Notes: generated by a model from the sequence alone, not told the origin. A stretch of 64,000 nucleotides of DNA from Lepidodermella squamata (GCA_047495785.1 JBLDXI010000064.1:620001-684000); one strand, 5' to 3'; numbered from the stretch's first letter, positions 18,964-59,005 are shown. Made by a program: numbers and translations.

Positions 18964-21500
18964 TCAACAATATAACGTTGATCGACTTGCTCCCCGCGAT
19001 CTCAGCAAATCAGCAACATCGACTTTCGTATTGCAAATTGCGATATCAAAAGCTGTGTTAAAGCCGAATAAACTTCTAGCATCCTTATTTGCTCTATCCA
19101 GCAACAGTCGAGCTACTTCGACTTGCCCGTAGTGAGCCGCAAACATCAGCGCTGTCCAGCCAAAGTCGGACGTGGCCTCGATGGCCGCCCCGCGATCCAG
19201 CAACAGTCGAGCTACTTCGACTGTCCCATTCGCAGCCGCATACATCAACGCTGTCATGCCACCGTTATTCTTGACCTCGATGGCAGCCCCGCGATCCAGC
19301 AACAGTAAAGCAACTTCATCTCGCCCATTTGCAGCTGCTATCATCAATGCCGTCAAGCCCTGTATAGTTTTAGCATCAATGGCAGCGTTGCGATCCAGCA
19401 ACAGTCGAGCTACTTCGGCTGTCCCATTCCAAGTCGAATACAGCAACGCCGTCCAGCCATCAGTATCCTTTGCCTCGATTAAAGCATTGCGATCCAACAA
19501 CAGTCGAACGACTTCGACTTGGCCATCCGCAGCCGCAACGATCAACGCCGTTTTGCCATTGTTATTCTTAGCCTCGATGGCAGCGTTGCGATCCAACAAC
19601 AGTCGAGCCAATTCGACGGTCCCATTCTGAGCCGCAAACATCAACGCCGTCCAGCCATTGTTATTCTTTGCTTCGATATAGGCCCCGCGATCCAGCAGCA
19701 GTCGAGCCAATTCGACGGTCCCATTCTGAGCCGCAAACATCAACGCCGTCCAGCCATTGTTATTCTTTGCTTCGATATAGGCCCCGCGATCCAGCAGCAG
19801 TCGAGCTACTTCGACTGTCTCACTATAAGCCGAAAACATCAACGCCGTCCAGCCATTGTTATTCTTTGCTTCGATATAGGCCCCGCGATCCAGCAACAGT
19901 CGAACCACTTCGACTCGCCCATACTGAGCCGCATACATCAGCGCCGACCTGCCAATTTTGGACTTGGCCTCGATGGCGGCTTTCCGATCAAGCAGCAGTT
20001 GTACCATTTCGACACGCCCTTTTATTGCCGCAAAAATCAACGCAGTCCAGCCATTGCTATCCTTGGCCTCGATGGCAGCGTTGCGATCCAGCAACAGTCG
20101 AACTACTTCGACTTTCCCATACTCAGCCGCATACATCAACGCCGTCAAGCCATCGCTATCCTTGGCCTCGATGGCAGCGTTGCGATCCAGCAACAGTCGA
20201 ACTACTTCGACTTGCCCCTTCCCAGCCGCAATCATCAACGCCGTCCAGCCATCGTTATTCCTGGCCTCGATGGCACCGTTGCGATCCAGCAACAGTAAAG
20301 CAACTTCATCTCGCCCATTTGCAGCTGCTATCATCAATGCCGTCAAGCCATCACTATTCTTTGCCTCGATGGAAGCCCCCTGATCCAACAACAGTTGAGC
20401 TAATTCGACTTGCCCATTCTTAGCCGCAATCATCAACACTGTCCAGCCAGAGTTATCCTCCCTGTCATTCACATTAGCTCCACGTTCAATGAAAAGCTGA
20501 ACAATTTGCAGTCGCTGGTCTGATTGGCTCCGATTGCACAATACACTGTGCAGCAGGGTGCCATTTGTCATAGTCAAACCACCACAGTCAATCGTCTTTT
20601 CGTTGCGCCAGTTCGGGTCGAATTTGCCGCCAGGGGATTCGTCGATCTCCGCAACGAGTTGCCGCACCTGCGCCACGTCGCCCGCCTTGGCTGTTGCATT
20701 CCACAACTGATCGTAAAGTTCACGAATCTATATGTCATAAACAAAAATTGGGTTTCTATTAGGATCGAATATTTGAGATGAAATTGAAGCTGAAGCTGAA
20801 ACGGAGGATGATCCTGTTGATCGCCTACCTCTTGGCTTGCACTTTCGCAATATTTCAGTTTCCCCTATATAATTATGATTTTTCTTCGCCAATAAGTAGT
20901 TCTATCCAGGGCTCAGACAGTTGTTGTGGTAATTATCGCAAAAAAAGCATTTCTTCTCGAATCAAGCTATCAATATTATTATTGACGTTATTAATTTTAC
21001 CTCGAATCAAGGCATCGAGTAATTTGGTAACAGTAAAAGATGATAGACATTTCACGATAGCTCATGAGCGTGACGTCGACATTTCACGATAGACGTCTCC
21101 CTGAACCCTGAACGTAATCGTAATAAGGAAACACTCGAGCATCCGAGAGACAGTGGAGTTGCGAGATCAGTGATCCGACTAGGTCTGAGCGCTGAGGGGG
21201 TACGCAAAAAGTGATTAAATACATCTCGGTCGCAAACTTTGTTCGCTCCCATTGGCAGCTTATCTCTATATTTACTACTAAAACTAAAGGCCGCACACAA
21301 ATAAACGCCGCAGAAAACATCCTGTTTGTGTTGAATATCAGTAATATTAAATTTAAACAAACCAGCCATGAGTAGTTGTTCGGTCCTGCTGGATCCACAG
21401 CTATGGGGTTCACATAATCGCCTTCAGTTTTACCTTGAGCAGCAACCAATCCGGATGCCAGCCCAAGGAAACCGATTACGATTGCCAAGTAGAGACGCAT
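18964..21500 (-). CDS. Locus A: predicted secreted Cys-capped ankyrin-repeat protein (SP + N-cap + 14 ANK + C-cap, ~633 aa)
   Basis: Exon 1 21500-21363 (MRLYLAIVIGFLGLASGLVAA..NYSWL, phase-0 GT donor). ANK exon 20727-18964 begins at acceptor ..CATATAG|ATT CGT GAA and has no ATG before its N-cap. 33-aa GxTALMxAA repeats. The ankyrin call is firm; the splice join is inferred. Confidence 0.75.
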
Positions 21501-21770
21501 TTTGAAAATTAAACAAGAAAACTGAGCTTTCAAATAAGAATTTTCTCTTGCTCGGGTGTTACGTGCTACGTTTTTTTTCGTTCAAGTATTTTTATTATAT
21601 ATCAAGTCTGAAGTCGTGCCGTGTTTTTTTCTCCTTTTGTAATATTGATGAGTAACGCATGAGTAATAAATTATTCAGATCCTTTGTTTACAAATTCCCA
21701 CTCATATATCAAAAACATCCTGTTAGGATCAGTCGTTTCATTTTCATGACGGTGGCGATTATACTCAATC
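21501..21770 (-). promoter_or_regulatory. Conserved 5'UTR/promoter block of the secreted-ankyrin family (copy A)
   Basis: Blocks such as TTTTGAAAATTAAACAAGAAAACTGA and GCATGAGTAATAAATTATTCAGATCCTTTGTT recur upstream of every family ATG. TATATAA on the minus strand near 21596-21602. Confidence 0.6.
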
Positions 21771-23099: not shown

Positions 23100-24850
23100 C
23101 CTGTGGCAGACGAGAGTTCGGAAGAAACACCGGTGACTTCAGAGGCGGCGACGGGGAGAGACGAACGCTTTCGAAATCCTCACGCAGAGGCGAAACCATG
23201 GCAGAACGGTATAGTCAGCATAGCGGCTTCGTGCGATGACCAGGAAAGCGGAGATGCTAGGCACGCGGCACCGCTGCTCAAGGGCAGAGTTGCGGACGCG
23301 ATCGTCCAGTCGAACGCGGAGAAGGCAATTGTTCTGAAGTACGTCCAGACGGCGAAGCTGCGGAGGAGAAGGCAACAGCCCTGAAAGTCGCAATGGAGCT
23401 TACAAGTGAAAGGTAGGTAGCGCGGCGCCATCTCAAAGACAGGCCCGGACGATGCACGACCGTGTGAAACCAGGACAGATTACGCCCGCACCGTTGAAGG
23501 ACGTGGTCTTTGTGAGGCTTCAAAGTGAGCTTTTCATCGAAAATGAGCCCGAGTATGCGCAACGCTGTCACCTGTGGAACGGCGGCGCCGCGTAGTTCGA
23601 CTCGAAGGACTGGGGGCTGGCGAGAGAAAGCGATGACTGCGCTTTTAGAGGCATTTTAGAGGCGCCAAAGGCATGCCCAGGCGGCAATTCGATCGACGTC
23701 GGTCTGGGCGAGCGTCTGAGCTTCGACATAGGTAGCACCCGTGCTGGCAAGGGTGAGGTCGTCGGCATAAGCGTCCAGGGATGTAGATGATGTAGGATGT
23801 AGAGGAGCGGAGAAAGCGGGGACCCTTGCGGAACACCGCACTGTAACACGGCCTGCTTGCCTGAGGAAACCGGCCACACGAGCTTGGAGCTTCCGATCGC
23901 GTAAGTAATCCGCGAGCCACCCAATGAGATAGCGCGGCAGAGGCAGTTGGCCAAGCTAATCGACCAAGCCAGCGTGCCAAACTGAATCGTACGCGGCCTT
24001 CACATCGAGACCAACAACTATCATCTTCCACTTGGTCGCGCGGGCCTGATGCACGCGGTGGGCAACACAAACTGAAATGCGAGCCGCCGGGCGATGCTCA
24101 CGAGAAGCATATTGATTGTCCGGGAGGAGATGGTGGGCCTCCAACATCTGGTTCATCAAACGCGTGATTATCGCAACGAGAATTTTGGCATCCGACGGCA
24201 ATAGCGATATGGGACGCTGCGACGACACGGCTTGCCCGACTTGGGCACAGCCACGGCAACTGTCTCCTTCCAATCCGGCAGGGAGTATTGGCTGCCGCGG
24301 CACATGTTGTAGAGCAGACGAAGGTGAGTCTGTAGAGGCACACCAGCCCACTTAAAAAAGACGTTGCCGACACCATCGAGTCCACGAGTTGAAAGGCTTC
24401 AGGTTATGAATTGCTCGCGCTAGCATGCGCTGGCTGACACTGCGGACCAGGTAGGTGAATTACGGCATCAGGCTGGAGGCCAGGGTCTGTGGACATAAGA
24501 TGTTCAAGCTCGAGCCAACGCTGACGGGCAAGAGCGTCGGCAGCTGGGTCACAGTGGTGGTACATCGGAGCCACAAAGTGAGTGAGCAACTCGTCGGCGA
24601 GAGCGGTCGAGGGGCGGAGAATAGAGCCGTCGGGTAGGGTCATCGGACCGGTCGAGCGAGGCGGCTGGTGCCGGTCGAGCTTTCGCAGACGTACCCAAGC
24701 TTCACGATAGCGCAGCTGTGCAGAGATGGCCTCAACTTGCCGCAGGTTGGCGACATCGCGGTTGTACTCGAGCTGTTGCATCGAGCCGCTTGATTTCGGC
24801 TGCGACAGCGGGATCAACGTGATTGCCAATGGCCCGCTTAATAAGAGCAC
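23100..24850 (-). mobile_element. Degenerate (frameshifted) non-LTR retrotransposon RT region
   Basis: Fragments RPISLL, LDVKAAYDSVWH, GVPQGSPLSPLLY, AYADD and LRILGLIFDEKLT lie in several frames; boundaries approximate. Confidence 0.85.
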
Positions 24851-27535: not shown

Positions 27536-27569
27536 TGACGCATTTCTGTCGTGCGATCCGCTAATAGAG

Positions 27570-28700: not shown

Positions 28701-31700
28701 TCAACACGTTGACCTCGCTCGACTTGCTCCACGCGACCTCAGCAAATCGGCCGCATCGGTGTTGCTGTTGCAAATCGCGATATCGAGAGCTGTATCGCCT
28801 CTTGCATTTGTGACTTTCTTGTTTGCACCTCTATCCAGCAACAGTCGAACTGCTTCTACTGTTCCATTCTGAGCCGCACTCATCAATGCCGTCAAGCCAG
28901 TGGTGGACTTGACCTCGATGGCAGCCCCGCGATCCAATAACAGTCGAGCTACTTCGACTTGCCCATACCAAGCCGCTCTCATCAACGCCGTCACGCCCTC
29001 TATATTTTTACCTTCAATGGCAGCCCCGCGATCCAGCAACAGTCGAGCAACTTCGATTTGCCCGCGGCTAGCCGCAATCATCAACACCGTATCACCAGGG
29101 TAGTTACTCTTTTCCTCGATGTCAGCTCTGCGATCCAGCAGCAGTCGAACTACTTCGACTTGCCCAAACATAGCCGCATACATCAACGCCGAATAGCCTG
29201 ATTTATCCTTAGCCTCAATAGAAGCGTTGCGATCAAGCAACAGTCGAACTGCTTCGACTTGCCCATACCAAGCCGCTCTCATCAACGCCGTCACGCCATC
29301 TATATTTTTACCTTCAATGGCAGCCCCGCGATCCAGCAACAGTCGAGCAACTTCGATTTGCCCGCGGCTAGCCGCAATCATCAACACCGTATCACCAGGG
29401 TAGTTACTCTTTTCCTCGATGTCAGCTCTGCGATCCAACAAGAGTCGCACTACTTCGACTTGCCCAAACTCAGCCGCATCCATCAACGCCGTCCTGCCAT
29501 TGTCGGATTTGGCCTCGATAAAAGCGTTGCGATCCAACAGAAGTCGAGCTACTTCCACTTGCCCATACCTAGCCGCTCTCATCAACGCCGTCACGCCCTC
29601 AATATTTTTACCTTCAATAGCAGCGTTGCGATCCAGCAACAGTTGAATTACTTCGATTTGCCCGCGATAAGCCGCAATCATCAACGCCGTATCGCCGGGG
29701 AAGTTACTCTTGCCATCAGTGGCAGCGTTGCGATCCAGCAACAGTCGAGCTACATCGACTCGCCCATTTGCAGCCGCCCACATCAACGCCGTCCAGCCAT
29801 AGTTATCCTCCCTGTCATTCACATTAGCTCCACGTTCAATGAAAAGCTGAGCAATTTGCAGTCGCTGGTCTGATTGGCTCCGATTGCACAATACACTGTG
29901 CAGTAGGGTGCCATTTGTCATAGTCAAACCACCACAGTCAATCGTCTTTTCGTTGCTCCAGTTCGGGTCGAATTTGCCGCCTGTGGATTCGTCGATCTCC
30001 GCAACGAGTTGCCGCACCTGCGCCACGTCGCCCGCCTTGGCTGTTGCATTCCACAACTGCTCGTAAACTTCACGAATCTATATGTCACAAACAAAAATTG
30101 AGTTTCTATTAGGATCGATTATTTGAGATGAAACTGAAGCTGAAACTAGCTGTAACGGAGAGGGATCCTGTTAATTTCCTAACTTATTACATGCCCTTGA
30201 TCCGACTTTTCAATTTCCCCAAAATGTCTACGAATTATTTGTCGCGAAGCGCGAAGTAGTTCTATCCTGGGCCAGGGCGACGGCCTCTTCAAAATGTATA
30301 ACCCCCGTCTGGGAAAACTAGAGACAAATAGGATGAGTTGTAAGAAAGCAGAAATAGACCGCTGATAAGAGAAGCTGAGCTGAATTTTAGTTTTACAAAT
30401 CGAACCGAATCGAATTCGTTATCGTATATTTGGTTGCCGTGATGAAATACAAACCGAACCGAACGAACCGGATTTCAACCGGATTCGGCGTCGAATAACC
30501 TAAAAAGTGGTTTATTCTTTCAGAAAACTTACAGGTCTTGCCTGCCTCGAGACGCAAAAACCAGGCTGGGACCAGGTGACGTTCGAGAGGCACGATATGA
30601 TAGAATTTCCTCTGATATTGAAATTCGAGTTGCATGATATTGTTCGCGTGGCTCCAACGCTCGATTGACCAGGTGATACGAAGCCGTTTCGGATTATGGG
30701 TGGCAGCCCACAAACTTTGCACGATTATTTTGTTACAATAATCAAAAACGATGAAAAATGAGTCACCTGCTGGTTCACAGCTACCAGCCGCAGACCAGGT
30801 GCCGTTTGCTTGGCACTGACTTGTTCCAGTGTAGGAAGTAGCGGGGGGGATGAAAAGTCGCGAAAAGTCGCGCCCCCAAAAAAATAAACCATCCCCCCTG
30901 CTCCAAGTTTAGTCGTTGTGGCGAAGGGCAGGCTATCAGCTACAGTAACTGAGCTGTTTCCAAGTAACGGTAAACGAATGCGTTCAAAAAACCCCGCTAA
31001 TCAAAGTTCACATGAATAATAAACAGTGCTGAAATAATACATTTCAGTAAAGAAAATCAATATAAATAAATATTAGAATTTAGTTTTTTGAAAAAGAAAA
31101 TACCCGGGAATCCGTTCAACGCATCTAAGAGCACCCGCCGCCTGTTAAGGTAAAAAAGCGTCCACAATCCAGGTTCTTGGACATGCTTGCTCAAAACGGT
31201 CTTGAATTTTGAAAATCTAATTTCAGATTCGTGATCTAGGGACCTTACTTGTAATTAACGATGTATTTTTTCTTTGTATCTCGTTCAGACGTTCAATCCC
31301 GGCTCCATTTTGCTCCGGGAGCGGGATGATCTTGCTTGACCCCAGGTTCTTGGCCATGCTTGCTCAAAACGGTCTTGAATTTTGAAAATCTAATTTCAGA
31401 TTCGTGATCTAGGGACCTTACTTGTAATTAACGATGTATTTTTTCTTTGTATCTCGTTCAGACGTTCAATCCCGGCTCCATTTTGCTCCGGGAGCGGGAT
31501 GTATTTTTTCTTTGTATCTCGTTTAGACGTCATTTATAACCTTGCAGTTTGAAATGTCGAAGCGTGATCGCCTCGTAGCGGTGACTAAGCCTCCGTCTCA
31601 AGTGGAAGTAAACAAGTTTTTCAGAGTGGGTGCTACATCACAAGCCGCCGTAATTGATGTTAGAGCGTCTGAGTCAGAAATCGTTTATTCCGATTCCGAA

Positions 31701-33758
31701 TCTGATGAAAATGGATCGCCTCCCAAGAGAAGACAGATCGTTTCTGCTGTACCTAGGCCGAAATCCGTTGCTGTTAACCGGCAACTTGACTCATCGAGCT
31801 CCTCGGCGTCTACTTGTTCATCAGAGGTGTTCGTTGAACCCAAAAGTGAAATACCGACTGAAATGGTCGAGGTGGTTGTGAAAGCTGCTCGCATCGAACT
31901 GGAATCGCTGGCTGCATTAAAGACTGACAAATCGCATCCCGTTGCCTTCAAATCGGGCGAAATGTTTTCTAAATGGCTAAATCGTCAGTTCACTTCTCTC
32001 GAATTTGGAACGTCTGGGATGTACTGCAAGGAAAACAAGCTTTATTGCTCTCTGTGTCAATCCGGTAAATTCAATTTAAATTTTCATTTCATTTTTAATA
32101 TGTTTTCTTCAGGATTTGATCTGACAAAAGGGCGCTATTCTCCGGCTTTCACAACGGAAGGTGCTACCTGCAATTCGAAGCGATCTGATAAGACTTGGCA
32201 GAAGCTGCATAAACATTTCAGGTCTAGTCCTCACCAGCAAGCCTGGAAGGAGATGAAGAGACGGCAGCTCGATGGCATTCAAGCGGCCTTTCTTGTTGCC
32301 GAAGAAAATGAAGATGAACGATTCCGAAAATGTGTTGGCGAAACTATTGCTGTGTTCGATGTGTCCTATACAAGCGTCAAGGAGCATTTGGCTTTTGAGA
32401 AGCATCCAGAGATGTTAGCCTTGCTTCGTCGTCATGGTGTGAAGACCGGTACCGTTCTCTTTTCGAAACATTCTTCTAAGAAAATCGCCATGTTCGTTTC
32501 CGACGCCATGAAGAAACAGTTTGTCAAGTATATCATCGAGCAAAAAAAGAAGCTTGCGGTTATGGTTGACGAGAGTACTAATGTACAATCGAAGTCCGGT
32601 TTGGTTATCTACATTCGTTTCGTATCCGAACACGAAGGTACAACCTGGTTTTTTGAGCTAGTAGAATTGGACGATCTTGACGCTGATGCCATTGCCGATG
32701 CTATCGTCAAGAGCTTGGTTGATGGTGGCTTCAGTTTGGAGTACCTGAAGGAATTTTGGATAGCGTTAGCGATGGATGGCGCATCAGTTATGCAAGGGCG
32801 ATTTAATGGAGTCGGTATGTTCTAAAATCTCGTCATTATGGCTTTAGGATATAATCTTACATTAACAGGTGCTAATTTAAGAAGGAGGTTTAACAAATTG
32901 TGGCTAATTCACTGCTTAGCCCATCGGCTGGAGCTAGCAATAGCTGATGCCATCAAATCTTTAACCGCTGTTCAAATGTTCAAATCCTTCGCAGCTGACG
33001 TGTACAACTTCTATTCAAACTCAAGCAAGCGTCTCAAAGAGCTATCGTCCGAAGCCTCGGAGCTTGATGTGGTGATTCGTCGCAACCAAAAACTCTTTGA
33101 CATCAGGTGGGCCTACTCGTCCTACCTCAGCATCACTGCTTTGCTGAATAACATGCCTGCAGTTTATGAGCACCTGAAGCGAATTTTTTTGATAACTTTT
33201 ACTTGTGTTTCAAACCTATCCCCCTTTCGCTGAAAAGTCTACTTCCTACACTGACTTGTTCCTTGGCCAACGCGTTTGAAGCCTGGATTGCAGACCAATG
33301 TCATCGTGGACAAGTAAGATGTTGATCTGTTGAAGCTAGTTAGATATCCGTTACTTAATACAGGAGCGGGGCCACAGTCTTGATAACAAGCATGAAATAT
33401 CAGTTTAGAAGAGCTTTTGTTACATACTTATCGGGTTACACCTTCCGTTAATCACCGGTCGAAACGGCGGTACGCACGTGGCAGTCGATACAGATGACGA
33501 ATAGGTGTAGCCAGGGTTGCATTTCAAGCTAACAACTGCTCCTTTTTCCACAGCTGTTCCCGGCCTCAGAACTGCGCCAGAATCTTCCGAAGTTTCCGGC
33601 TCCATTCGTGTCACAAATCCCGCCGGCACGTTAGGCACGGGGCAAGACTGCTCAGGCGTGCTTGTTTGGCTGCGAACATTCGCGTTTTCCGATTGAGCAA
33701 AGACCAGGCCCGATGCCAGCCCAAGGAAAACGATTGCAATTGCTAAGTGGAGACGCAT
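28701..33758 (-). CDS. Locus B: predicted secreted SP-CCP-CCP-CCP-ankyrin(10) protein; middle CCP exon interrupted by a hAT element
   Basis: Exon 1 33758-33428 (signal peptide fused to CCP1, phase 1). CCP2 exon 33378-30767 (NCGPAP..CNPGFK..GTS|QCQANGTWS..CEP) split by the hAT. CCP3 exon 30714-30533 (phase 1 to 0, GTAAGT donor). ANK exon 30077-28701. About 688 aa if the insertion is removed. Confidence 0.75.
31169..31531. repeat. 173-bp near-identical tandem duplication in the hAT 5' region
   Basis: CCAGGTTCTTGG.CATGCTTGCTCAAAACGG.. starts at 31169 and 31342; a partial third sub-copy at ~31498-31531. Confidence 0.9.
31554..33181 (+). pseudogene. 3'-truncated hAT transposase
   Basis: LYCSLC, MVDEST, MDGASVM, HCLAHRLEL and DIRW are present; homology stops at VYEHLKR about 60 bp before the right TIR, so the C-terminal ERxFS region is missing. 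Confidence 0.85.
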
Positions 33759-34290
33759 TCAGAAAATTAAACAAGAAAACTGAGCTTTCAAATTTAAGAA
33801 TTTCCTCTTGCTCGTGTGCGCATCTAATGTTGTTTTTACGTTCAAGCATTTTTCTTATATATTAGGTTTTATCTCTCCTTTTTGTAATATTGATGAGTAA
33901 TGCATGAGTAATAAATTATTCAAATCCTTTGTTCACGAATTCCCACTCGTGAAGACATGCAGATTGAAAACATCTGGCTTGGAAACCTGAATAGATCAGT
34001 CATTTCGTTGTCTTTACTCTTGACGGTGGCGATTATTTGATGTAGGAAGTTCATTGAAGAAAAATGAGCTATCAACTCTTGCTCGTGTATGGGCATTTAC
34101 GTTCTTCGTGTAGCCTTTTCGTCCAAGTAATTTTTTCTCCTATATATACATTAGGTTCTAACTCGTTTTTTTTCTCCTCTGTAATATTGATGCAGTGCAT
34201 GAGTAATAAATTATTCAGATCCTGTTGACAAATTCCCACTCTTCAAAACATCCAGATTGAGAAAATCCTGTTAGGAAACCTGAATAGCAA
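33759..34290 (-). promoter_or_regulatory. Family promoter block of locus B plus an extra tandem copy
   Basis: The block ..TAATATTGATG..GCATGAGTAATAAATTATTCA..AATTCCCACT..GGAAACCTGAATAG occurs at ~33885-33994 and again at ~34182-34287. Confidence 0.6.
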
Positions 34291-38290: not shown

Positions 38291-38485
38291 AAATAGTGGT
38301 GTACTTACAGCTCGCAATAGATTATTTCTTTACGCAATGTGGGAGTTGGTCTCAGCTGAAGGTGCTAAGCTATCGATCGCCACGACAAGAAACCTAGCCA
38401 TAGATTGAAAAGCACATTGCGGTATTGATCCAAGCATGCAACTATGCACTGCCTCAAATATTGATGATTCAACTACTCTACCTAT

Positions 38486-39000
38486 TACGCCACAAGAACT
38501 TCAAAAATTACTAGATATCCTAGAAAATTTTGCAGTTCGAAACAACCTGAAAATTAACGTAGAAAAAACCAAGGTCATGGTGTTTCATCGGGTCAGCAAT
38601 TATAAAACAGTTGATTTCGAGTTCAACATTTACAACAAAAAGATAGAGCAAGTGTCTGAGTTCAAATGTCTTGGAATCATCCTGACCTATAATCTAAATT
38701 TTAAACGCAGCTCTGAGACGGCCCAGGCTAAAGTTAAGCGAATAATTTCACAACTGCCAGACACACTTAGACCATATAAAATATAAAAATTAATTTCCTT
38801 CTAATACTTTCCGCACGCTGTACTGCTCATATTCTATTAGCCACATGACGTACGGGGCCGGCATATTGGGCTTCAAACTTCGAAACTCGATGCCGTTACT
38901 GAACATTTTATTTACAAAAACCGTCCTCTAATTACCTAAAAGTACTAGAAACGAGCTCATGGCTCGCGAATTTTGCATCGAATCACCTTGCGTCTTGATT
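38486..39000 (+). mobile_element. LINE RT fragment, close relative of the 42965-48580 element
   Basis: PQELQKLLDILENFAVRNNLKINVEKTKVM is nearly identical to ORF 46215-46694. Confidence 0.85.
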
Positions 39001-42960: not shown

Positions 42961-42964
42961 TGCT

Positions 42965-48580: not shown

Positions 48581-48612
48581 GAAAATCGAAAAATGTTTTT
48601 CAATATATCGCC

Positions 48613-49607: not shown

Positions 49608-49620
49608 TTTGAAACTTTAA

Positions 49621-51251: not shown

Positions 51252-54200
51252 TCAGCAGGAAGACTGCCCTCGACTTACTCCTCGCGACCTAAGCAGAACG
51301 GCCGTACGGGATTCGTTGCCAAAGACGCAAATCGCGATATCGAGCGCTGTCCGGCCTAGATAATCTCTAGCATCCTTATTTGCACCTCTGTCAAGCAACA
51401 GTGGAACTACTTCGCCTGGCCAATTCGAAGCCGCACGAATCAACGCCGTTGAGCCATTGATATCCTTGGCCTCGATAGCTGCGTTGCGATCTAGCAACAG
51501 TCGAGCTACTTCGACTCGGCCAAAATGAGCCGCCAACATCAACGCCGTCTCGCCAACTACGTCCATGGCCTCGATATCAGCGTTGCGATCCAGCAACAGT
51601 CGAGCTACTTCGAGTCGCCCATATGAAGCCGCCAACATCAACGCAGTCTGGCCATTATTAGTCTTGGCTTCGAGGGCAGCGTTACGATCCAACAACAGGC
51701 GAGCTGCTCTGACTTGCCCATTCCTAGCCGCATACATGAACGCCGTCTCGCCAACTACGTCCCTGGCCTCGATGGCAGCGTTGCGATCTAGCAACAGTCC
51801 TACTACATCGACTTTCCCTAACAAAGCCGCAATCATCAAAGCCGTCGTCCCATCTTTATCCTTAGCATCAATGGTTGCGTTGCGTTCAAGCAACAGTCGA
51901 ACCACTGCGGCATTCCCTGACACAGTCGCAATTATCAACGCAGTCTTGCCATTTTTAACCTTAGCATCAATGGTAGCGTTGCGTTCAAGGAACAATCGAA
52001 CGACATCGACTAAGCCATTCGAAGCCGCAATCATCAAAGCCGTCGTCCCTTCATTATCCGTGGCATCGATGGTAGCGTTGCGTTCAAGCAACAGTCGAAC
52101 CATTTCGACGTACCCCTTCGATGCAGCCAACATCAACGCTGTCCAGCCAACGTCATTCTTGGAGTCAATAGCAGCGGGGTTGCGGTCAAGCAACAGTCCA
52201 ACTACGTCGACTCTCTCATTTGCAACCGCAATCTCCAGTGTCGTCCTGTCAAGTCTATCCTTCGTCTCGATGGTAGCGTTGTGATCAAGCAGCAGTCGAA
52301 CTAGTTCGATGTAACCATCCTCAGCCGCAAACATCAACGCCGTCCAACCTAGTGAATCAGACTTGATATCCACATCAGCACCATGATCTTCAATCAACAG
52401 TTGCGCTATTTGCACTCGCTTGTCTGATTGCGTCCGATTGTAACATATGACACTGTGAAGCAGCGGGCTATTCGTCATATCCCGTAACAGTGAATATTTT
52501 TCCCAAGAATCGCAGAGAACCCGCTCTGGGTTGCGCCAGTTCGGGTTGAAGTTACCGCCAGTGGCATTGTCGATGTCCGCTATCAGTTGCTTCACCAGCG
52601 CCACGTCTTCCGCCTCGGCTGTTGCGTTCCAAAGCCTCTCGTATGCTGTGCGAATCTAAATGCAAAACACAGAAGGATAGATTCCACATCAGCAATGGAA
52701 AGGTGGTCCGATAATACACTGGGAGGCCCAGCGACGTGATTCAGTAAAAATGAACGTGGTTTGAGTCTTGAAGCTGGGGTGTCGCCTGTACTTCGCACCC
52801 TCCTCCTGAGGCAGCCGCATTTTTTGAAATGCGACGATACCCGAGCCTTGACAGTATTAACAGCGCACGAACCAGAATACAGATGATTAAGGGTAGAATT
52901 TATCCTTACAAAATGCAATTAAAAAATCAGCAACAGACATCGATCTATTTGTGAATATGTAGCAACTTACAGATGGTGTCTCTATGACAACGCAAGAACC
53001 AGGCTGCGACCAGGCTGAGTTCGATAGGCACGATATGGCAGCATTTCCTTGAATCTCGAAGTTTTCATTACATGATATGGTTCGGGTGGCTCCGAAGCTT
53101 GATGGACCAGGAGATATTTTGCCGTTTCGGATCGTGGGAACAGTACCGCAGCCTTAACAGACACATTCGGAGGAGAGTTAGCTACAATAATTAAAAATGA
53201 TTAAAACTATTACTTACCTACAGGGTTGCATCTTCCATTTATCAGTGGTTGAAATGGAGACAGGCACGTTGCAGTTGAGACAGATGAGGAGTACTCGTAA
53301 CCAGGGTTGCATTGAACTCTCACCACGCCTCCTTTTTCAACAACTGTCCCAGGCATTAGAACTGACCCAGTATTTGCTGGGTTCACTCGGGTGACATAAC
53401 CCGCCGTTACGCTTGGTACAGGACAGGACTGGACTGATGGGCTGCTGCTCTGTAGACCTGTGTTGTTCGCAATCCAATCGAGAACCTTGCAGACTCTGAT
53501 GTAGATGCTGGGCAATCCTGCTATGCACGAATCGCCATTATTCGAGTTTATGCCCAGTAAATAAGTCCTATTTGATTTCGAGCACATGAGTGGACTTCCG
53601 GAATCGCCGAAGCAGGCGCCTCTGTCATCGGCGGCTAAACACATTTGGGAGTCGGTGATAGAGAACGGATATGGGATGGAATACGGGATGCTGGAATACT
53701 CCTGCGAGCAATTTGCGTAGGACCTAACATGAAGATTAAGTTTCCTCGGGATCTTGGATCTAGGCCGGGCTGAAATACGAAAAAAACAGAAATAAGGCTA
53801 TAAATCACCTCCAACTACGCAGACACATGCACCGCGGTCCTCTTTTTCCCTCCCATGTTTGTTGTCCTATCCCAGTATGCTAGTCTTGGATTAAGGAGCT
53901 GCCAAAATGACTAGTGATTTCAAAATATAAATTCTGAATATTTTCATCTAGATCACAGTCCGGTCTGGCCGAGCTATGGGTGATAGATAATAGCCCCCAT
54001 GATCGTCGCACACTGTCCTATCTTTAAAATCCAAGGAAATCACTGGCCTCTTGGTCTGAATGCATGACGTTCGTGGTGCGGAAGAATCAGCACTTCCTCT
54101 TTTGCTTGAGTACTGGTTCTTCCGCCCCACGAATTATGAGGCCTGATACGTATGCCTTTAGAAAATATCACATACTGTATTCAAAACGACCCCAGCCAAC

Positions 54201-54864
54201 CGCGACAGCTGACTCGCATCCATCAATTGAATTTGCGGTGTAAGAATTTGTTCGGCACATGGTGGCCGCGTCAGGCAAACAAATCGGTTTGATCTGCGGC
54301 GTGAATCTAGGCAGCGGCCTTTTCAATCGCAAGAGGGCAAAATCAAAATCAGGTAAATTCTGATTTCTGTTGTATAGCGGATGCAGCAAAGGCGGTATCG
54401 AGACGAAAGATTCATATGATCCTCCCTTCGAGCGATCACTGATATCATGGTGGCCTAGCATTGCTATGATCCTGTTCAATCAAACACAGAATCGCCAAGA
54501 GGGTAAATTTATTAAAACACTCACGAAATAGGTGGTGTCTTTCCGGCATTCGAAACGCATTGAGCTGCTGTTATCAGCCATTGCTTCGAGATGAGGGAAG
54601 CTCCACAGTAAGACGGTGATGTTTCACCGCTTCTGTATATTTCAAGGAAGACCTTGAATGTAAATCTAGTTATTGTTGAATGAATCTATATTTCGAATGC
54701 AAACATACCAGCCACGGGTATGCGTTGGGCTCTATTGGTTGACTTCCTGGCTGGCTTGATTCTGCATCAGGATGAGTGGAGATCGAAGCACCGCATTCAA
54801 GATCGTCTTGAGCAACGACCAGGCCCGATGCCAGCCCGATTGCAATTGCTAAGTGGAGATTCAT
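51252..54864 (-). CDS. Locus D: predicted secreted SP + trypsin-like pseudoprotease (His to Gln) + 2 CCP + Cys-capped ankyrin(10) protein, ~905 aa, 6 exons
   Basis: Exons 54864-54709, 54652-54525, 54471-54176, 53769-53218, 53152-52971, 52655-51252 form one open frame of 2718 nt. Motifs YPWL, CGASLISKQWLITAAQC, DFALLRL, PICLP, VGWG, CFGDSGSPL; two CCP modules; then IRTAYERLWNAT and the ANK repeats. Confidence 0.82.
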
Positions 54865-56522
54865 TTTGAAAATTAAACAAGAAAACTGAGCCAGAACAAC
54901 GAAGAATTTCCTCTTGCACGTGTACGCTTGTTCACGTTCTACGTGTTTTTTTCTTATTAATTAGTTTTCAACTCGTGTTTTTTCTTGTTTTTTAATATTG
55001 ATGTAATGCATGAGTAATAAATTATTCAGATCCTTTGTTGACAAATCCCGCTCGCAGATCGAAAACATCCGCTTACGAAACCTGAATAGTAAAGATGCAT
55101 AAGATAACAACTCCTGTGCCTCACTTCGCGCGCTCAGTGCAACTCGGCGGGCATTGCAGTCGAACGATTGAGAAATCGAGAAAGGCTTTTCGTTAACCTT
55201 AAGCGTCGTTAACCAAGTAAACGTCTACGCGGGTGAAATCGTAGTGTTTGTAGTGCTGTTGTTCACTGGTAGTCATCGGGTCACCGGGCTAAGAACTGCT
55301 ATGATCTCGAGCTATTCCGCGCTTTCCACTGAGCAAACCTTGTTAAGCTCAGCTGAAATCAGCTGCGCTATTGGGATTAATTTTTCAGCTGCTATATCCT
55401 ATAGTCCAACTAGATTCCAGAGAGAAACTCCGAAAATATCTTCAGGAGTATTCTTGAGTTACGGCAGCTTCAGCTCTCAGGTATTTAGAATAAGCTTGCA
55501 GGAGGTCAGAGACTTGGAGAGATGGCTCAAGATCTCCCCTGAGGTGCTACTAAGACACCAAAGGGGCAAAAAGGCGACAACGTACTTCACACACCTATCC
55601 TTCATTGCCATCGAGCTACCTCATGAGAACGCCATGGAACGGTGAGGCATGACGTTTTATTTATTTATGTATTTTGAAGTTATTACACCCAAGAGAGGCA
55701 GCTCGACAATGTTGCGGAAAACAATATATAATTGCAGGGCAGGTTCAGATTTAGGACAGGAAAGGTGTAGTAGGAGAAGACAACAAGTTATAGGCCGTAA
55801 CAGAGAATAATAGGACAAAAACAATGTATAAGCAAAAAAATATAATGGGCAGAAAAATACATTCAACAAAATTGATCACTGAGATAATTTAGCGGCATTT
55901 TATCCACGACAGTACTGATAAACAGCCTCGCGACATGCTTCGGCGGATTGGGCTTGTTGTTCCTTCAGAGGAAGCTGTTTCCGAAAATCGGGCCCTCGGT
56001 AACCCAGGCTCATCGTACCGCGCAGGAAATCGACGATCGGTTTGATGTTGCTCATCAAACGAACGAAACACTTGCTTATTCTGTAAGTAAACACACGTCT
56101 GTAAAGAAATCATTTTTTATGATTTAAGCAATCTTGGATGGGTCAGAATACAGAAACCAGAAACACTTTTCTTGTACGAATGACTGTATGAATCGAGGTT
56201 CCGCAGGAACCGAAGATGAATACAGTCATGAGGCTGTCACTGTAGTCAGTCAGCAGGCGCTACTACTTACTAACAGTCAAGCAATCGATAACATTTGTTG
56301 AAATTGCTAGAGCATTTCAAGAGATCTTTTAATATTTCGCATTAAGTTTTCAGTTGGAAGTGGACCTGTTGTGTAGGCCATTGAGATAGAAGAACAATTG
56401 TAATCAACACATACATTAGGGAAATGTCATTAAGTATACAAATAATCAGATAATCATCATCCATCTCCGCTATCAGTGAATGCCGCCGAGCGCTGTTGTG
56501 CTTGTCAGCAGGAAGACTTCGC

Positions 56523-59005
56523 TTAACCTGCTCCTCGCGATCGCAGAAGACCGGCCGTAGCGGAGTCGTAGCCAAACATGCGAACCGCCAAATCAAGCGC
56601 AGTCTTGCCATCCTTGTTTCTTATATCCCTGTTTGCACCTCTATCAAGCAGCAGTCTCACAACAGGGACAAACCCTTGGGCGGCCGTCAACGTCAACGCC
56701 GTTTCGCCATCGTTATCCTTCGCGTCGATGGTAGCGTTGCGATCTAGCAACAGTTGAAGTACTTCGAGGCGCCCCATCCTAGCCGCAATTATCAACGCAG
56801 TCTTCCCATCTTCACCCCTTGCCTCGATGGCGGCATGGTGATCCAGCAACAGACGAGCTACTTCGACATTCCCACTCCAGGCCGCCCCCATCAAAGCCGT
56901 CATCCCATCCCAACCCTTGGCCTCGACAGAAGCGTTGCGATCCAGCAACAGTCCAACAATTTCGGGGTGGCCAACTGCACACATTAACGCCGTACTGCCA
57001 TAATCATTCGTGGCGTCAATGGTAGCGTTTCGATCGAGCAACAGTTGAACTACTTCAACTTTCCCATAGATACCCGCTAGCATCAACGCCGTTAATCCAC
57101 CGCTATCCTTGGCCTCGATGTCAGCTTTGCGATCCAGTAACAGCCGAACCAAGTCGACATACCCATACTTTGCGGCCAACATCAATGCTGTCGTGTTATC
57201 TTTATCCCTGGCCTCGGTCGTGACGTTGCGATCCAGCAACAGTCGAGCTACTTCGACACGCCCATGCTCAGCCACTAGCAGCATCGCCTTCGATCCAATG
57301 TTACTCATTGAGGGGTTGCGATCCAGCAACAGTCGCACAACTTCGGCATGTCCCATCTCAGCGGCCTGTAGAATCGCCGTCTCGCCATTTTTACCCTTGG
57401 CGTCAATGGTAGCGTTGCGATCTAACAGCAAACGAACTGCTTCGACTCGCCCTTTATCAGCCGCCCATATCAGCGCAGTCTTCCCATCGTTATCCTTAGC
57501 CTCGATGTCAGCTCTGCGATCCAGCAGCAATCGAACTGCTTCGACTAGTCCATTCGCAGCCGCCCTGATCAACGGCGTCAAGCCATCTTTATCCCTGACC
57601 TCGAAAGCAGCGTTTCGATCAAGCAACAATCGAACTACTTCGGCGTGCCCTTTCGAAGCGCCCGAAATCGCCGCTGCCCGGCCCAGAATAGCCGATGCCT
57701 CGAAGGGAGACTTGCGATCTAGCCACAGGTCAACTACCATCTCAATATAGTTGACTCTTCCAGTCCCAGTTGCTAACATCAACGCCGTCTCGCCAGCGTT
57801 ATTCTCAGCCGCGATGGAAGCGTTGCGATCCAGCAGCAGTCGAACTGATTCGGACTGCCCCCGACTAGCCGCCCACATCAAAGCCGTCGTCCCATCGTTA
57901 TCCTTTGCCTCGATGGTGGCGTTGTGATCGAGCAGCAGTCGAACTACGTCGACTTGCTCATTCTCTGCTGCACGCATCAATGCCGTCCAACCATGTTTAG
58001 TCTCCACAGCATTCACATCAGCACCATGGTCCCGGATCAACAGTTGAGCTATTTGCACTCGGTCTGATTGCGTCCGATTAGAACACATGACACTGTGAAG
58101 CAGCGGGCTATTCGTCATATCCCGTAACAGAGAGTATTTCACCCAAGAATCGCAGAGAACCACACCTGGGTTGCGCCAGTTCGGATTGAAGTTACCGCCG
58201 GTGGCATTGTCGATCTCTGCAATCAGTTGCTTCGCCAGCGCCACGTCTTCCGCTTCGGCTGTTGCGTTCCACAGCCTCTCGTATGCTGTGCGAATCTGGA
58301 ATGCAAAACACAATGTAACAAAAGACGTTCAGATTGCACAGCAGGTGTCATCAAGATGAAGGCACAAGATGAAGGCGGGTATCATCGTCCCATAGAGTAT
58401 GGAAAATATTAATTCCTTACTCTTGCTTTCTTTTGCATAGGTGCAATGCTTTCTTTGCAATGCATTATGAAAAAGTGAATTTACGCATTTAAGCTTGAAG
58501 TAGAATTCACGCATGCACTTTTCCACGCTCGCCTTTGTTTCCTCCTCGCGGCGTATGTCTCCTTGGTTCCCCGGCAGCGTCAAAGACCGCTAAACAAAGG
58601 AATAAGTGGAAATGCTTCTGCGCCACAAAAGTAAGGTCCAGCGACGTGATTTCACTTGGTAACACTACACAAGCAGCTAACAACCCGGCCTAAACAATCT
58701 TGCATCCGTCTCGGCATCGTGAATTAGAAATGCGAACTTTGCAAAACCTTGCACAACCCGAAAACCCAATTAAAATGCTAAAAGCCGACATCGATCTGAT
58801 TGTGAATATGCAGCTGCAGCTAACAGAGGACAGAAGGTGATTCTCTTAAAACGCGAGAACCATGCTGCTATTTTGAATCGAAACTTACCAGCCAGGTTGC
58901 TTCGACTTGTTGACTGCCTGGATCGTTTGATTCTGCAGCAGCAGTGGAGATCAACGCAACCAGGCCTGATGCCAGTCCAAGAAAAGCGATTGAGAGGAGA
59001 CGCAT
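56523..59005 (-). CDS. Locus E: predicted secreted ankyrin(14) protein, ~629 aa
   Basis: Exon 1 59005-58889 (signal peptide, ..EATWL|GTAAGT, phase 0). ANK exon 58295-56523 follows acceptor TTTGCATTCCAG|ATT CGC. The intron keeps a remnant of the last CCP exon end. Confidence 0.78.

What the first reader, a model, noticed from the sequence alone, without database searches (positions are those of the whole stretch)
18964..59005. Secreted, Cys-capped, variable ankyrin-repeat gene family with modular pseudoprotease/CCP exons (candidate DARPin/VLR-like recognition system)
Seen: all four long ankyrin ORFs start at a homologous phase-0 acceptor (AG|ATT CG., at 20727, 30077, 52655, 58295) with no ATG before the N-cap. 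Each lies downstream of a homologous signal-peptide exon and promoter. The donors that can join them are all phase 0: ..WL|GT in A and E, and the 182-nt last CCP exon with GTAAGT in both B and D. Resulting open frames: A SP-ANK14, B SP-CCP3-ANK10, D SP-SPH-CCP2-ANK10, E SP-ANK14. Known: ankyrin repeats are overwhelmingly intracellular (latrotoxins are a noted secreted exception); CCP plus trypsin domains typify complement-type proteins (MASP, C1r/s, factor B, haptoglobin); VLRs use capped variable LRR arrays. Inference: a germline-encoded family of extracellular ankyrin binders, possibly innate-immune opsonins or toxins. I know of no described family with this architecture but could not search.
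Basis: partly seen in the sequence, partly recalled or inferred. Interest (0 to 1): 0.95.

Follow-up and report, generated by a model that had tools for sequence, protein, structure and literature searches.

The report
Secreted ankyrin-repeat gene family with protease/CCP modules
This small animal genome holds about 150 genes that put ankyrin repeats, normally an intracellular binding module, behind a secretion signal and often behind a serine protease and complement-type modules, which looks like a natural outside-the-cell "DARPin" repertoire that I found described nowhere.

Summary
On the minus strand, A and E are signal-peptide exon plus ankyrin exon. D is a clean 6-exon, 905-aa frame: signal peptide, trypsin-like domain, 2 CCP, ankyrin. 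B is interrupted: a 2.4-kb hAT transposon sits inside its middle CCP exon.

The ankyrin exons cannot start translation themselves. They open at a conserved phase-0 AG acceptor, usually an in-frame TAG, with no ATG upstream. An RNA-like public run holds a contig joining a paralogue's last CCP exon exactly to its ankyrin exon. That junction is absent from the genome.

The family is large: at least 148 N-cap copies, 144 open, and about 50 with protease and CCP exons. Most paralogues keep the His/Asp/Ser triad, so "pseudoprotease" applies to D and a small H57Q subclade only.

Secretory-pathway signatures are strong:
- two invariant N-cap cysteines and a C-cap pair lost only together
- almost no cysteine in the repeats
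- N-glycosylation sites 2.3-fold above shuffled expectation

No relative of the N-cap turned up in 1.8 billion representative proteins. I found no paper describing this architecture. The function (recognition, defence or toxin) is inferred, not shown. The scan had already noted this family on other pieces of the same genome.

The parts
18964..20727 (-). Gene A, ankyrin exon: N-cap, 14 repeats and C-cap, 587 codons plus stop
   Evidence: Pfam Ank_2 E=2.9e-199. A phase-0 acceptor tatag|ATT sits at 20727. Repeats are spaced 33 aa apart.
21363..21500 (-). Gene A, exon 1: signal peptide plus 24 residues, ending ..YSWL|gt in phase 0
   Evidence: Hydrophobic h-region, 19-aa Kyte-Doolittle mean 2.27. 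Homologous to exon 1 of the protease-bearing paralogues.
21501..21720 (-). Gene A, conserved promoter and 5'UTR block
   Evidence: 27-nt motif. Alignment of the four upstream regions.
28701..30077 (-). Gene B, ankyrin exon: N-cap, about 10 repeats and C-cap, 458 codons
   Evidence: Acceptor tatag|ATT at 30077.
30533..30714 (-). Gene B, last CCP exon, 182 nt, donor GTAAGT, ends in phase 0
   Evidence: Pfam Sushi 36.5 bits. Coordinates.
30767..30826 (-). Gene B, 3' part of the broken middle CCP exon
   Evidence: Aligned to the intact sister paralogue L031. Boundaries.
30827..33253 (.). hAT-type transposon inserted in B's middle CCP exon. It has 15-nt terminal inverted repeats, an 8-bp target duplication GAACAAGT, and transposase ORFs at 31542-33233 on the plus strand.
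33254..33378 (-). Gene B, 5' part of the broken middle CCP exon
33428..33758 (-). Gene B, exon 1: signal peptide fused directly to CCP1, with no protease domain; ends in phase 1
   Evidence: Pfam Sushi 22.7 bits.
51252..52655 (-). Gene D, exon 6: ankyrin exon with N-cap, about 10 repeats and C-cap
   Evidence: The X1 loose end lies exactly at 52655.
52971..53152 (-). Gene D, exon 5: CCP2, the last CCP, 182 nt, donor GTAAGT, ends in phase 0
   Evidence: Pfam Sushi 37.9 bits..
53218..53769 (-). Gene D, exon 4: C-terminal third of the trypsin-like domain (GDSGSP, with residue 189 changed to Gly) plus CCP1
   Evidence: Pfam Trypsin 59.8 bits and Sushi 20.8 bits..
54176..54471 (-). Gene D, exon 3: middle of the trypsin-like domain, with Asp102 present
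   Evidence: Pfam Trypsin 26.9 bits..
54525..54652 (-). Gene D, exon 2: start of the trypsin-like domain; the catalytic His57 is replaced by Gln (TAAQC)
   Evidence: Pfam Trypsin 28.5 bits..
54709..54864 (-). Gene D, exon 1: signal peptide plus propeptide-like stretch ending ..YPWL|gt in phase 0
54865..55084 (-). Gene D, conserved promoter and 5'UTR block
56523..58295 (-). Gene E, ankyrin exon: N-cap and about 12-14 repeats, some irregular. Both C-cap cysteines are absent and one odd cysteine sits in a repeat.
58889..59005 (-). Gene E, exon 1: signal peptide, ending ..ATWL|gtaagt in phase 0
59006..59225 (-). Gene E, conserved promoter and 5'UTR block
33759..33978 (-). Gene B, conserved promoter and 5'UTR block

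Best explanation
The four loci are members of a large, lineage-restricted family of secreted modular proteins. In them an ankyrin-repeat solenoid of 3 to 16 repeats serves as an extracellular binding domain.

The ancestral, commonest layout has 7 exons: signal peptide, S1 serine protease with an intact His/Asp/Ser triad and Asp189, three CCP modules, and one large ankyrin exon. Because the exon phases are compatible, deletions have produced shorter forms:
- SP-CCP-ANK (B)
- SP-ANK (A and E), where exon 1 splices straight to the ankyrin exon
- dead-protease forms (D)

Shown: the gene structures, the family size, one CCP-to-ANK splice in RNA-like data, a confident ANK fold, the cysteine and glycosylation-site signatures, and variability concentrated on the canonical ANK binding face.

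Inferred: the proteins enter the ER and are N-glycosylated. Their caps are stapled by two disulfides, C48-C64 in the N-cap and the 'AIC' cysteine with the C-terminal cysteine in the C-cap. They are then released. The diversified ANK face binds targets. In canonical members the tethered protease acts on or near whatever is bound, a single-chain recognition-plus-protease molecule, most likely for humoral defence or recognition. Protease-less and dead-protease members would act as pure binders.

Within this window the copies are derived or decaying. B is broken by a transposon. D has lost His57 and Asp189. E has lost the C-cap cysteine pair.
For: Gene models:
- A, D and E give uninterrupted frames over canonical GT..AG junctions.
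- A canonical 7-exon paralogue on contig C4 gives about 792 aa with TAAHC, DFALL and GDSGGP motifs.

The ANK exon is not a first exon:
- In 30 of 30 paralogues an AG acceptor sits at the conserved start [IV]REVYEQLWN.
- There is no Met upstream, and usually an in-frame TAG.

Linkage:
- The last CCP exon or the signal-peptide exon lies upstream of about 25 of 33 N-caps examined.
- About 50 family-type last-CCP exons and about 47 protease exons occur genome-wide.

RNA:
- Run X1 covers exons only.
- One X1 contig ends at 52655 and continues with 30 nt identical to the end of the last CCP exon of paralogue C36:562560-562589.
- In the genome that exon is followed by GTAAGT and a 1,203-nt intron before the ANK acceptor.
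- The joined sequence is absent from the genome at up to 3 mismatches.

Secretory signatures:
- The N-terminal h-region is the only signal- or TM-like segment outside the ANK repeats.
- C48 and C64 are invariant in 31 N-caps.
- For the C-cap cysteines, 23 members have both, 2 have neither and 0 have one.
- Only 7 Cys occur in 8,513 repeat-core residues. There are 167 NxS/T sites against 72.6 +/- 7.7 in shuffles, and three N-cap sites are conserved in 20-27 of 31 members.
- D has 24 cysteines after the signal peptide, an even number.

Fold:
- AlphaFold2 gives pLDDT 94.5 and pTM 0.90.
- The best structural matches are DARPins, designed ANK proteins and ankyrins.

Variability:
- Entropy peaks at repeat positions 3, 4, 6, 11, 14, 15 and 17.
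- dN/dS is 1.29 (CI 1.02-1.72) at those positions, against 0.42 for the framework and 0.41 for the caps.

Family size: 148 N-cap matches, 144 without stops.
Against: - There is no direct evidence of secretion, glycosylation or disulfides.
- The RNA evidence is a single short contig, from a run whose RNA nature is only a guess, and it comes from a paralogue rather than a window gene. The SP-to-ANK splice of A and E has no transcript support.
- The canonical R|IVGG activation N-terminus is not conserved (R|GPGS in the C4 paralogue, no Arg in D), so protease activity is uncertain.
- The dN/dS contrast used positions chosen partly from the same data, and repeats may not be orthologous between paralogues. 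An omega near 1 is also compatible with relaxed constraint.
- Enrichment of glycosylation sites is partly non-independent, because the motifs sit inside repeated units.
- Three of the four window genes show signs of decay.
Confidence: 0.7

Rival explanations
1. The architecture and export are the same, but the proteins are offensive: venom, digestive or effector proteins aimed at prey, hosts, competitors or symbionts. The ANK array would bind targets in or on foreign cells, as in latrotoxins or microbial ANK effectors, rather than serving self-defence recognition.
For: The only natural exported ANK proteins I could find in papers are toxins or effectors: alpha-latrotoxin, bacterial T1SS/T4SS Anks, oomycete and Plasmodiophora SP-ANK effectors, and Toxoplasma RON9. 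Large tandem, fast-diversifying secreted families are typical of venoms and effectors as well as of immune genes. Trypsin-type proteases are common gland products.
Against: Nothing in the sequence points to a delivery or pore-forming module. CCP plus S1 protease is more typical of humoral cascades. The organism's biology is unknown to me, and there are no tissue data.
Confidence: 0.2
2. The four window loci are non-functional relics of the family: a decaying tandem cluster in a transposon-rich region. Their open frames would merely reflect young age.
For: B is split by a hAT insertion. D lacks His57 and Asp189. E lacks both C-cap cysteines, carries an unpaired cysteine and has irregular repeats. 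The cluster is interspersed with LINE-like and hAT elements. A's close paralogue L005 ends without a C-cap.
Against: All four ANK exons, 1.4-1.8 kb each, are free of stops, as are all six D exons. Exact-match X1 contigs lie on D exons (records 6 and 7). The H57Q state occurs with both CAA and CAG codons in other paralogues, so a dead-protease subclade appears to be maintained. Promoter blocks are conserved. B can still give an in-frame product by skipping a symmetric exon.
Confidence: 0.15
3. The signal-peptide, protease and CCP exons and the ankyrin exons belong to separate neighbouring genes, and the ankyrin proteins are ordinary cytosolic proteins. The apparent fusion would be an artefact of reading raw DNA.
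For: Ankyrin repeats are overwhelmingly intracellular (established knowledge). Introns between the last CCP exon and the ANK exon are long in many paralogues, 1.2-5.3 kb, in a small-intron genome. The last CCP exon would meet a stop 9 codons into the intron if left unspliced.
Against: The ANK exons have no start codon and begin at a conserved acceptor. The first Met lies about 55 residues in, inside the conserved N-cap. An exact CCP-to-ANK junction is present in X1 and absent from the genome. Phase compatibility is conserved across paralogues. The cysteine and glycosylation-site pattern is unlike that of cytosolic ANK proteins.
Confidence: 0.04

Closest known systems
Complement-type modular serine proteases (MASP, C1r/C1s, factor B/C2) and haptoglobin
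   Same: They are secreted proteins that combine CCP (sushi) modules with a chymotrypsin-fold S1 domain. Haptoglobin pairs CCP with a dead protease, as D does. The exons are modular and phase-compatible.
   Different: The domain order is reversed here: protease first, then CCPs. There are no CUB, EGF or vWA modules. The recognition part is fused in cis and is an ankyrin array, which none of those proteins has. The R|IVGG activation site is not conserved. By sequence the protease is only a generic S1 member; the best PDB hits are enteropeptidase and chymotrypsin at E of about 1e-10.
Designed ankyrin repeat proteins (DARPins) and consensus ANK proteins
   Same: These are the best structural matches to the predicted ANK domain. 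Both have a near-consensus framework with variability at the same loop and helix-1 positions, plus dedicated N- and C-caps, and both work as extracellular binders.
   Different: DARPins are synthetic, cysteine-free and unglycosylated. The natural family has TALM in place of TPLH, cysteine pairs in both caps, conserved N-glycosylation sites and 3-16 repeats, and is fused to other domains.
Variable lymphocyte receptors (VLRs) of jawless vertebrates and other diversified secreted repeat or recognition families
   Same: A secreted solenoid of variable repeat number, flanked by cysteine-containing caps, with diversity concentrated on one face.
   Different: VLRs are LRR-based, not ANK-based, and are assembled somatically from cassettes. 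Here the diversity is germline, spread over about 150 genes in tandem clusters, and I saw no sign of cassette assembly.
Toxoplasma RON9 and other microbial signal-peptide ANK proteins (oomycete and Plasmodiophora effectors, bacterial Anks)
   Same: RON9 has a signal peptide, six ankyrin repeats and one sushi/CCP domain, and travels through a secretory organelle (PMC3299665). Oomycete and clubroot effectors are SP plus ANK.
   Different: The organisms are unrelated protists or bacteria. None has an S1 protease or cysteine-stapled caps, and none shares sequence with this N-cap. RON9 is a single-copy gene with a C-terminal membrane span.
alpha-Latrotoxin family (spider venom)
   Same: An animal protein with a long ANK array that acts outside the producing cell.
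   Different: From my own knowledge: latrotoxins lack a classical signal peptide, are released by gland-cell disintegration, and have a distinct N-terminal pore-forming region. They have no CCP or protease modules.

Membership tests
Ankyrin repeat superfamily (Pfam Ank_2 PF12796, Ank PF00023) | Tandem 33-residue helix-turn-helix-loop repeats that match the Pfam models above the gathering score | tested here: met
   Ank_2 E-values run from 2.9e-199 to 2.9e-77 for the four exons. Repeat spacing is 33 aa.
Ankyrin repeat superfamily | Predicted solenoid fold superposable on solved ANK domains | tested here: met
   The AF2 model has pLDDT 94.5. Foldseek hits to DARPins and ankyrin-R/B/G reach TM up to 0.92 and E of about 1e-16.
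S1 (chymotrypsin-fold) serine peptidases, Pfam Trypsin PF00089 | Sequence match to the family model | tested here: met
   D exons 2, 3 and 4 match profile positions 24-46, 53-128 and 137-220 at 28.5, 26.9 and 59.8 bits; the cut-off is 20.6.
S1 serine peptidases (active enzymes) | Catalytic triad His57, Asp102, Ser195 | tested here: not met
   In window gene D, His57 is replaced by Gln (TAAQC), Asp102 and Ser195 are present, and Asp189 is replaced by Gly. The triad is met in at least 9 paralogues outside the window (TAAHC, DFALL, GDSGGP). Three other paralogues share the Gln.
S1 serine peptidases (zymogen-activated) | Activation cleavage that creates an Ile16-Val-Gly-Gly N-terminus | tested here: not met
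   The in-register position reads R|GPGS in the canonical C4 paralogue and S-Q-P-G in D.
CCP / sushi / SCR domain (PF00084) | Module of about 60 residues with four cysteines and a conserved Trp, matching the Pfam model | tested here: met
   The last CCP exons of D and B score 37.9 and 36.5 bits. The CCP1 modules score 20.8 and 22.7 bits, just over the 20.7 cut-off.
Classical secretory proteins | N-terminal signal peptide (n-, h- and c-regions), no later membrane span, no retention signal | tested here: inconclusive
   The start M-R/N-L, a 14-17-residue uncharged h-region and small residues before Gln (..VAAQ..VVAQ..VFAQ) are conserved in exon 1 of the paralogues. There is no TM-like window outside the SP apart from amphipathic ANK helices. 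The C-terminus ..SRAKSSC has no KDEL- or GPI-like tail. No SignalP-type predictor was available.
Variable lymphocyte receptor-like somatic diversification systems | An incomplete germline gene plus flanking donor cassettes assembled somatically | tested here: not met
   All members seen are complete germline ORFs; 144 of 148 N-caps are open, with 3-16 repeats in one exon. No cassette arrays were seen.
Complement lectin- or classical-pathway proteases (MASP, C1r/s) | CUB-EGF-CUB-CCP-CCP-SP domain order | tested here: not met
   The order here is SP domain, then CCP x2-3, then ANK. No CUB or EGF exons lie between the signal peptide and the protease.

The most novel reading that the evidence does not exclude
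This animal has evolved an ankyrin-based humoral recognition system. It is a germline repertoire of about 150 secreted, disulfide-capped, glycosylated 'natural DARPins' under diversifying selection. About a third of them carry their own complement-style protease arm (S1 plus CCPs) in the same chain. Target recognition and proteolytic attack or signalling would then be one molecule. That would be an independent, ANK-scaffold solution to the problem solved by antibodies, VLRs, FREPs and the lectin-MASP pairs.
Probability: 0.3. Interest if true: 0.9.

Novelty: new variant of a known kind. Interest (0 to 1): 0.8.

Why it matters
Ankyrin repeats are the textbook intracellular interaction module. 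Their suitability as extracellular binders is known mainly from protein engineering (DARPins). A natural animal family of about 150 genes would show that evolution found the same solution. It exports ANK arrays, staples their caps with disulfides, decorates them with glycans, varies the binding face and repeat number, and couples many of them to a protease through CCP spacers.

If so, it adds a new scaffold to the short list of diversified recognition systems. It also offers natural rules for stabilising ANK domains outside the cell, through cap disulfides and glycosylation-site placement. And it gives a clear case of exon-phase-driven domain shuffling, with full, CCP-only, bare and dead-protease forms side by side.

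Even on the toxin or effector reading, it would be the first large secreted ANK arsenal described in an animal.

Tried and rejected
- **Relatives of the N-cap.** A word-indexed search restricted to the N-cap gave one weak, unrelated secreted ANK protein. A profile of 31 N-caps against 1.84 billion representatives gave only generic ANK hits to profile positions of about 46-94; none covered the N-cap proper. The top hits carry no Trypsin or Sushi domains and are only 31-36% identical, repeat to repeat. I conclude there are no detectable relatives. Distant ones scoring under about 80 bits would not have been listed.
- **Language-model look-alikes.** These are bacterial ANK clusters. I treat this as consensus-likeness, not as evidence of horizontal transfer.
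- **Lineage.** I could not name the organism. A neighbouring NHL-repeat protein resembles mollusc-rich clusters, which is only a hint of a spiralian.
- **'Opposite strands' joints in X1 contigs**. I could not interpret them and did not use them.
- **Other loose ends**, such as the one at 53458. These are paralogue divergence in the linker, not splicing.
- **A wider census.** Architecture counts therefore rest on 33 loci plus exon counts.
- **'Family of pseudoproteases'.** Rejected.
- **B as an intact three-CCP gene.** Rejected.
- **Membrane anchoring.** Rejected by the hydropathy scan.
- **Complex prediction.** Not run; no binding claim depends on it.

Full report
**What is in the window.** Four long minus-strand ORFs are ankyrin-repeat arrays: 18964-20727 (A), 28701-30077 (B), 51252-52655 (D) and 56523-58295 (E). 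Their Pfam Ank_2 E-values run from 3e-199 to 3e-77. The 33-residue repeats are almost perfectly regular, about 14, 10, 10 and 12-14 copies respectively. Each ORF opens directly after an AG acceptor (tatag|ATT, tttag|ATT, tccag|ATT) in phase 0, with no ATG in the short upstream open stretch.

Upstream of each lies a homologous first exon that starts with a signal-peptide-like sequence: M-R/N-L, a 14-17-residue uncharged stretch, then ..VAAQ..VVAQ or ..VFAQ. A 27-nt motif precedes the ATG at all four sites, 4 matches against 0 expected. About 220 nt of upstream sequence is conserved at 76% mean identity.

**Gene models.**
- A is 21500-21363 plus 20727-18964, giving 633 aa.
- E is 59005-58889 plus 58295-56523, giving 629 aa.
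- D has six exons: 54864-54709, 54652-54525, 54471-54176, 53769-53218, 53152-52971 and 52655-51252. All junctions are GT..AG and the frame is 905 aa with no internal stop.

In D, Pfam places Trypsin on exons 2-4 (profile positions 24-46, 53-128, 137-220) and Sushi on the end of exon 4 and on exon 5. All scores are above the gathering thresholds.

Its exon 1 (33758-33428) joins the signal peptide directly to CCP1. Its 182-nt last CCP exon (30714-30533) and its ANK exon are intact. Its middle CCP exon, however, is split at 33254/30826 by a 2,427-bp hAT-type element with 15-nt inverted termini, an 8-bp target duplication and transposase ORFs on the plus strand. The evidence is the comparison with the intact sister paralogue L031. 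The middle exon is symmetric (177 nt), so skipping it still leaves an open frame of 629 aa. B is therefore either a young pseudogene or a two-CCP form.

**The ankyrin exon is an internal or terminal exon family-wide.** The 95-residue N-cap of A finds 148 places in the 121-Mb genome, 144 of them without stops. In all 30 loci fetched:
- the conserved start [IV]-R-E-V-Y-E-Q-L-W-N has an AG acceptor at it, or within 9 nt upstream of the point where the match begins;
- in 23 of them the acceptor itself forms an in-frame TAG;
- none has a Met upstream.

Upstream, I found either exon 1 alone (A and its identical copy, L005, L006, L008, E) or the series exon 1, protease exons, CCP1, CCP-mid, CCP-last. 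The series occurs at about 20 loci, and the last CCP exon lies 0.3-5.3 kb before the N-cap. Genome-wide there are about 50 family-type last-CCP exons and about 47 family-type protease exons.

A complete canonical paralogue on contig C4 assembles into 7 exons and about 792 aa: signal peptide, S1 domain, three CCPs and five ANK repeats. Its exon lengths match D's where they are homologous (296 nt and 182 nt).

**Transcript evidence.** Only two runs held the locus. X2 is evidently DNA and covers everything. X1 is labelled 'RNA?' and covers only exonic bins. Some of its contigs are identical to D exons (table 2 and records 6-7).

One X1 contig laid on the ANK exon stops exactly at 52655, the predicted acceptor. 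It continues with 30 nt that are not D's intron. Those 30 nt are identical to the 3' end of the last CCP exon of a paralogue at C36:562560-562589. In the genome that exon is followed by GTAAGT and a 1,203-nt intron before ...tttag|ATTCGC, the N-cap of that paralogue. The joined sequence does not occur anywhere in the genome at up to 3 mismatches.

This is a spliced CCP-to-ANK junction at precisely the predicted bases. It is one short contig, it comes from a paralogue, and the run is not certified as RNA. I have no transcript evidence for the direct SP-to-ANK splice of A and E.

**Active or dead protease.** D reads TAAQC (His57 to Gln) and has Gly at position 189. Asp102 and Ser195 remain. Nine other paralogues read TAAHC, DFALL and GDSGGP, with Asp189. 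Three further paralogues share the Gln, encoded by both CAA and CAG. This suggests a maintained dead-protease subclade rather than random decay.

The classical R|IVGG activation N-terminus is not conserved: it reads R|GPGS in the C4 paralogue. Whether and how the intact-looking enzymes are activated is therefore open. By sequence the domain is a generic S1 member; the best solved relatives are enteropeptidase and chymotrypsin at E of about 1e-10.

**Signatures of life in the secretory pathway.**
- No hydrophobic segment other than the signal peptide qualifies as a membrane span. The C-terminus (..SRGASRAKSSC) has no retention or anchor signal.
- The N-cap has two invariant cysteines, C48 and C64, in 31 sequences that are otherwise 57-94% identical to A.
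- The C-cap has a cysteine in ..AIC.. and a cysteine as the very last residue. Among complete ORFs, 23 have both, two (E and L004) have neither, and none has just one. This fits a disulfide.
- The repeat core is almost free of cysteine: 7 in 8,513 residues.
- NxS/T sites number 167 against 72.6 +/- 7.7 in composition-preserving shuffles. Three N-cap sites are conserved in 20-27 of 31 members.
- D has 24 cysteines after the signal peptide. By eye from the translation they fall as 12 in the protease region, 4 plus 4 in the CCPs and 4 in the ANK domain.
- Trypsin and CCP domains are themselves obligatorily extracellular, disulfide-rich modules (established knowledge), and no membrane span separates them from the ANK array.

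**Fold and variability.** AlphaFold2 on a 290-residue member, with an 18-sequence family alignment, gives pLDDT 94.5 and pTM 0.90. The model has a two-helix N-terminal cap, a loop carrying C48, and then regular helix pairs. The nearest solved structures are DARPins, a designed consensus ANK protein and ankyrin-R/B/G.

Across 43 repeats of the window genes, entropy is 2.8-3.6 bits at positions 3, 4, 6, 11, 14, 15 and 17 and below 1 bit at most framework positions. In 14 colinear short paralogues, Nei-Gojobori dN/dS is 1.29 (bootstrap 1.02-1.72) at the face positions. It is 0.42 for the framework and 0.41 for each cap.

This fits diversification of a binding face on a conserved scaffold. But the positions were partly chosen from the same data, the repeats may not be orthologous, and an omega near 1 does not by itself prove positive selection. 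Repeat number varies from 3 to 16. B shows a recent internal triplication of a three-repeat unit.

**Evolution of the modules.** Exon 1 ends in phase 0 just after ..Y-P/S-W-L. That motif is the PWQ/L motif at the start of the trypsin domain. The ANK exon starts in phase 0, and the CCP exons are phase 1-1. Deletions therefore give in-frame SP-ANK (A, E), SP-CCP-ANK (B and its sister L031) and two-CCP forms (D).

The window cluster A-B-D-E appears to have a paralogous cluster in the same order on contig C4. D's protease and CCP exons are 95% identical to C4:1836554-1839435. B's exon 1 and last CCP exon are 94-98% identical to those of L031. A's N-cap is 79% identical to that of L005. Between A and L005 the promoter and exon 1 are 95% identical while the ANK exon is only 78% identical.

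**What it most likely does.**
- Shown: the structure, the family size, the modularity, and a pattern of constraint typical of an exported, diversified binder.
- Inferred: the proteins are secreted, glycosylated and disulfide-capped. The ANK face binds varied ligands. In canonical members the N-terminal protease, held at a distance by two or three CCP modules, acts on or near what is bound.

I favour a humoral recognition or defence role, because CCP plus S1 is the signature of such cascades and because of the germline diversification. A venom, digestive or effector role is a serious rival, since the natural exported ANK proteins found in the literature are toxins or effectors.

**Comparison with the known.** My full-text searches found secreted ANK proteins only in bacteria, oomycetes, Plasmodiophora and Apicomplexa, plus latrotoxin. 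Toxoplasma RON9 (signal peptide, six ANK, one sushi) is the nearest architectural precedent. A survey of domains associated with trypsins, built on the Nematostella set and compared across other taxa, does not mention ankyrin. No protein in 1.84 billion cluster representatives or in the 5.8-billion-protein index matches the N-cap.

I therefore file the domains as members of the ANK, S1 and CCP families. I file the system as a new variant of secreted modular recognition or protease proteins. It is not a member of the MASP/C1r family (wrong order, no CUB or EGF), and it is not VLR-like in mechanism (complete germline genes).

**Earlier notes of this scan.** Several first-reader notes and one follow-up on other pieces of the same genome describe the same family. 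Two notes on this window concern the variable face and the paired loss of C-cap cysteines in E. I re-tested those claims here rather than relying on them.

**Limits.**
- The organism is unidentified.
- No signal-peptide predictor was available.
- RNA evidence is one junction in one run.

Noticed in passing
window 30827-33253 and 11416-14114: Two copies of one hAT-like transposon family, sharing ORF motifs such as ..CSLCQ.. and ..HCLAHRLELA... The first copy is bounded by 15-nt inverted repeats (CAGTGTAGGAAGTAG) and an 8-bp duplication, and looks recently inserted.
   Followed up: partly
G000:C64:607883-611167 (L001), about 31 kb upstream of gene A and outside the window: A stretch holding exon 1 and the first 595 codons of the ankyrin exon of gene A is 100% identical over 3,285 nt to the window copy. 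It is either a very recent segmental duplication or an assembly duplication.
   Followed up: partly
G000:C4 about 1.76-1.85 Mb (L004-L006, L008, L031-L033; matches at 1835696 and 1842807): A paralogous cluster appears to carry the counterparts of A, B, D and E in the same order. Exons of the D counterpart are 95% identical, which suggests duplication of the whole cluster.
   Followed up: partly
window 21560-21690, 33820-33950, 54930-55060, 59070-59200 (minus strand): A conserved upstream block holds two closely spaced TTACTCAT-like motifs followed by TCAATATTA, about 120-170 nt before the ATG of all four genes. It may be a shared regulatory element; the factor is unknown.
   Followed up: no
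G000:C42:1561255, C42:1582683, C85:125789: Other family members carry Gln at catalytic His57, encoded by CAA or CAG. A dead-protease subclade seems to be maintained.
   Followed up: partly
window 35809-38317 (minus strand): Two adjacent ORFs, one with a Cys/His-rich zinc-finger-like region and one with NHL repeats. Together they look like a TRIM-NHL-type gene lying between B and D. Its nearest language-model clusters are mollusc-rich.
   Followed up: partly
window 8349-9602 (+), 23568-24850 (-), 40046-42103 (+), 46215-48568 (-): Several ORFs look by eye like non-LTR retrotransposon ORFs (reverse transcriptase, endonuclease). They are interspersed among the family genes, and two share about 89% identity over 425 nt (38493-38917 with 46220-46637).
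   Followed up: no
window 559-1095 and 3642-4337 (+): Two paralogous ORFs encode small cysteine-containing proteins with signal-peptide-like starts (..AEMVFRG.CTRLMQ..). Two further paralogous ORF pairs follow, at 2172-3036 and 5499-6197. This is a separate tandem secreted family.
   Followed up: no
window 60722-61378 and 63468-63953 (+): Two paralogous ORFs begin with glycosylation-site-bearing N-termini and hydrophobic helices, and look like first exons of 7TM receptor-like genes.
   Followed up: no
Read-laying output on window 52200-55100 (table 5): Seven 'opposite strands' joints occur in X1 contigs within D's exons. They may be assembly fold-backs among paralogues. They remain unexplained.
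   Followed up: no
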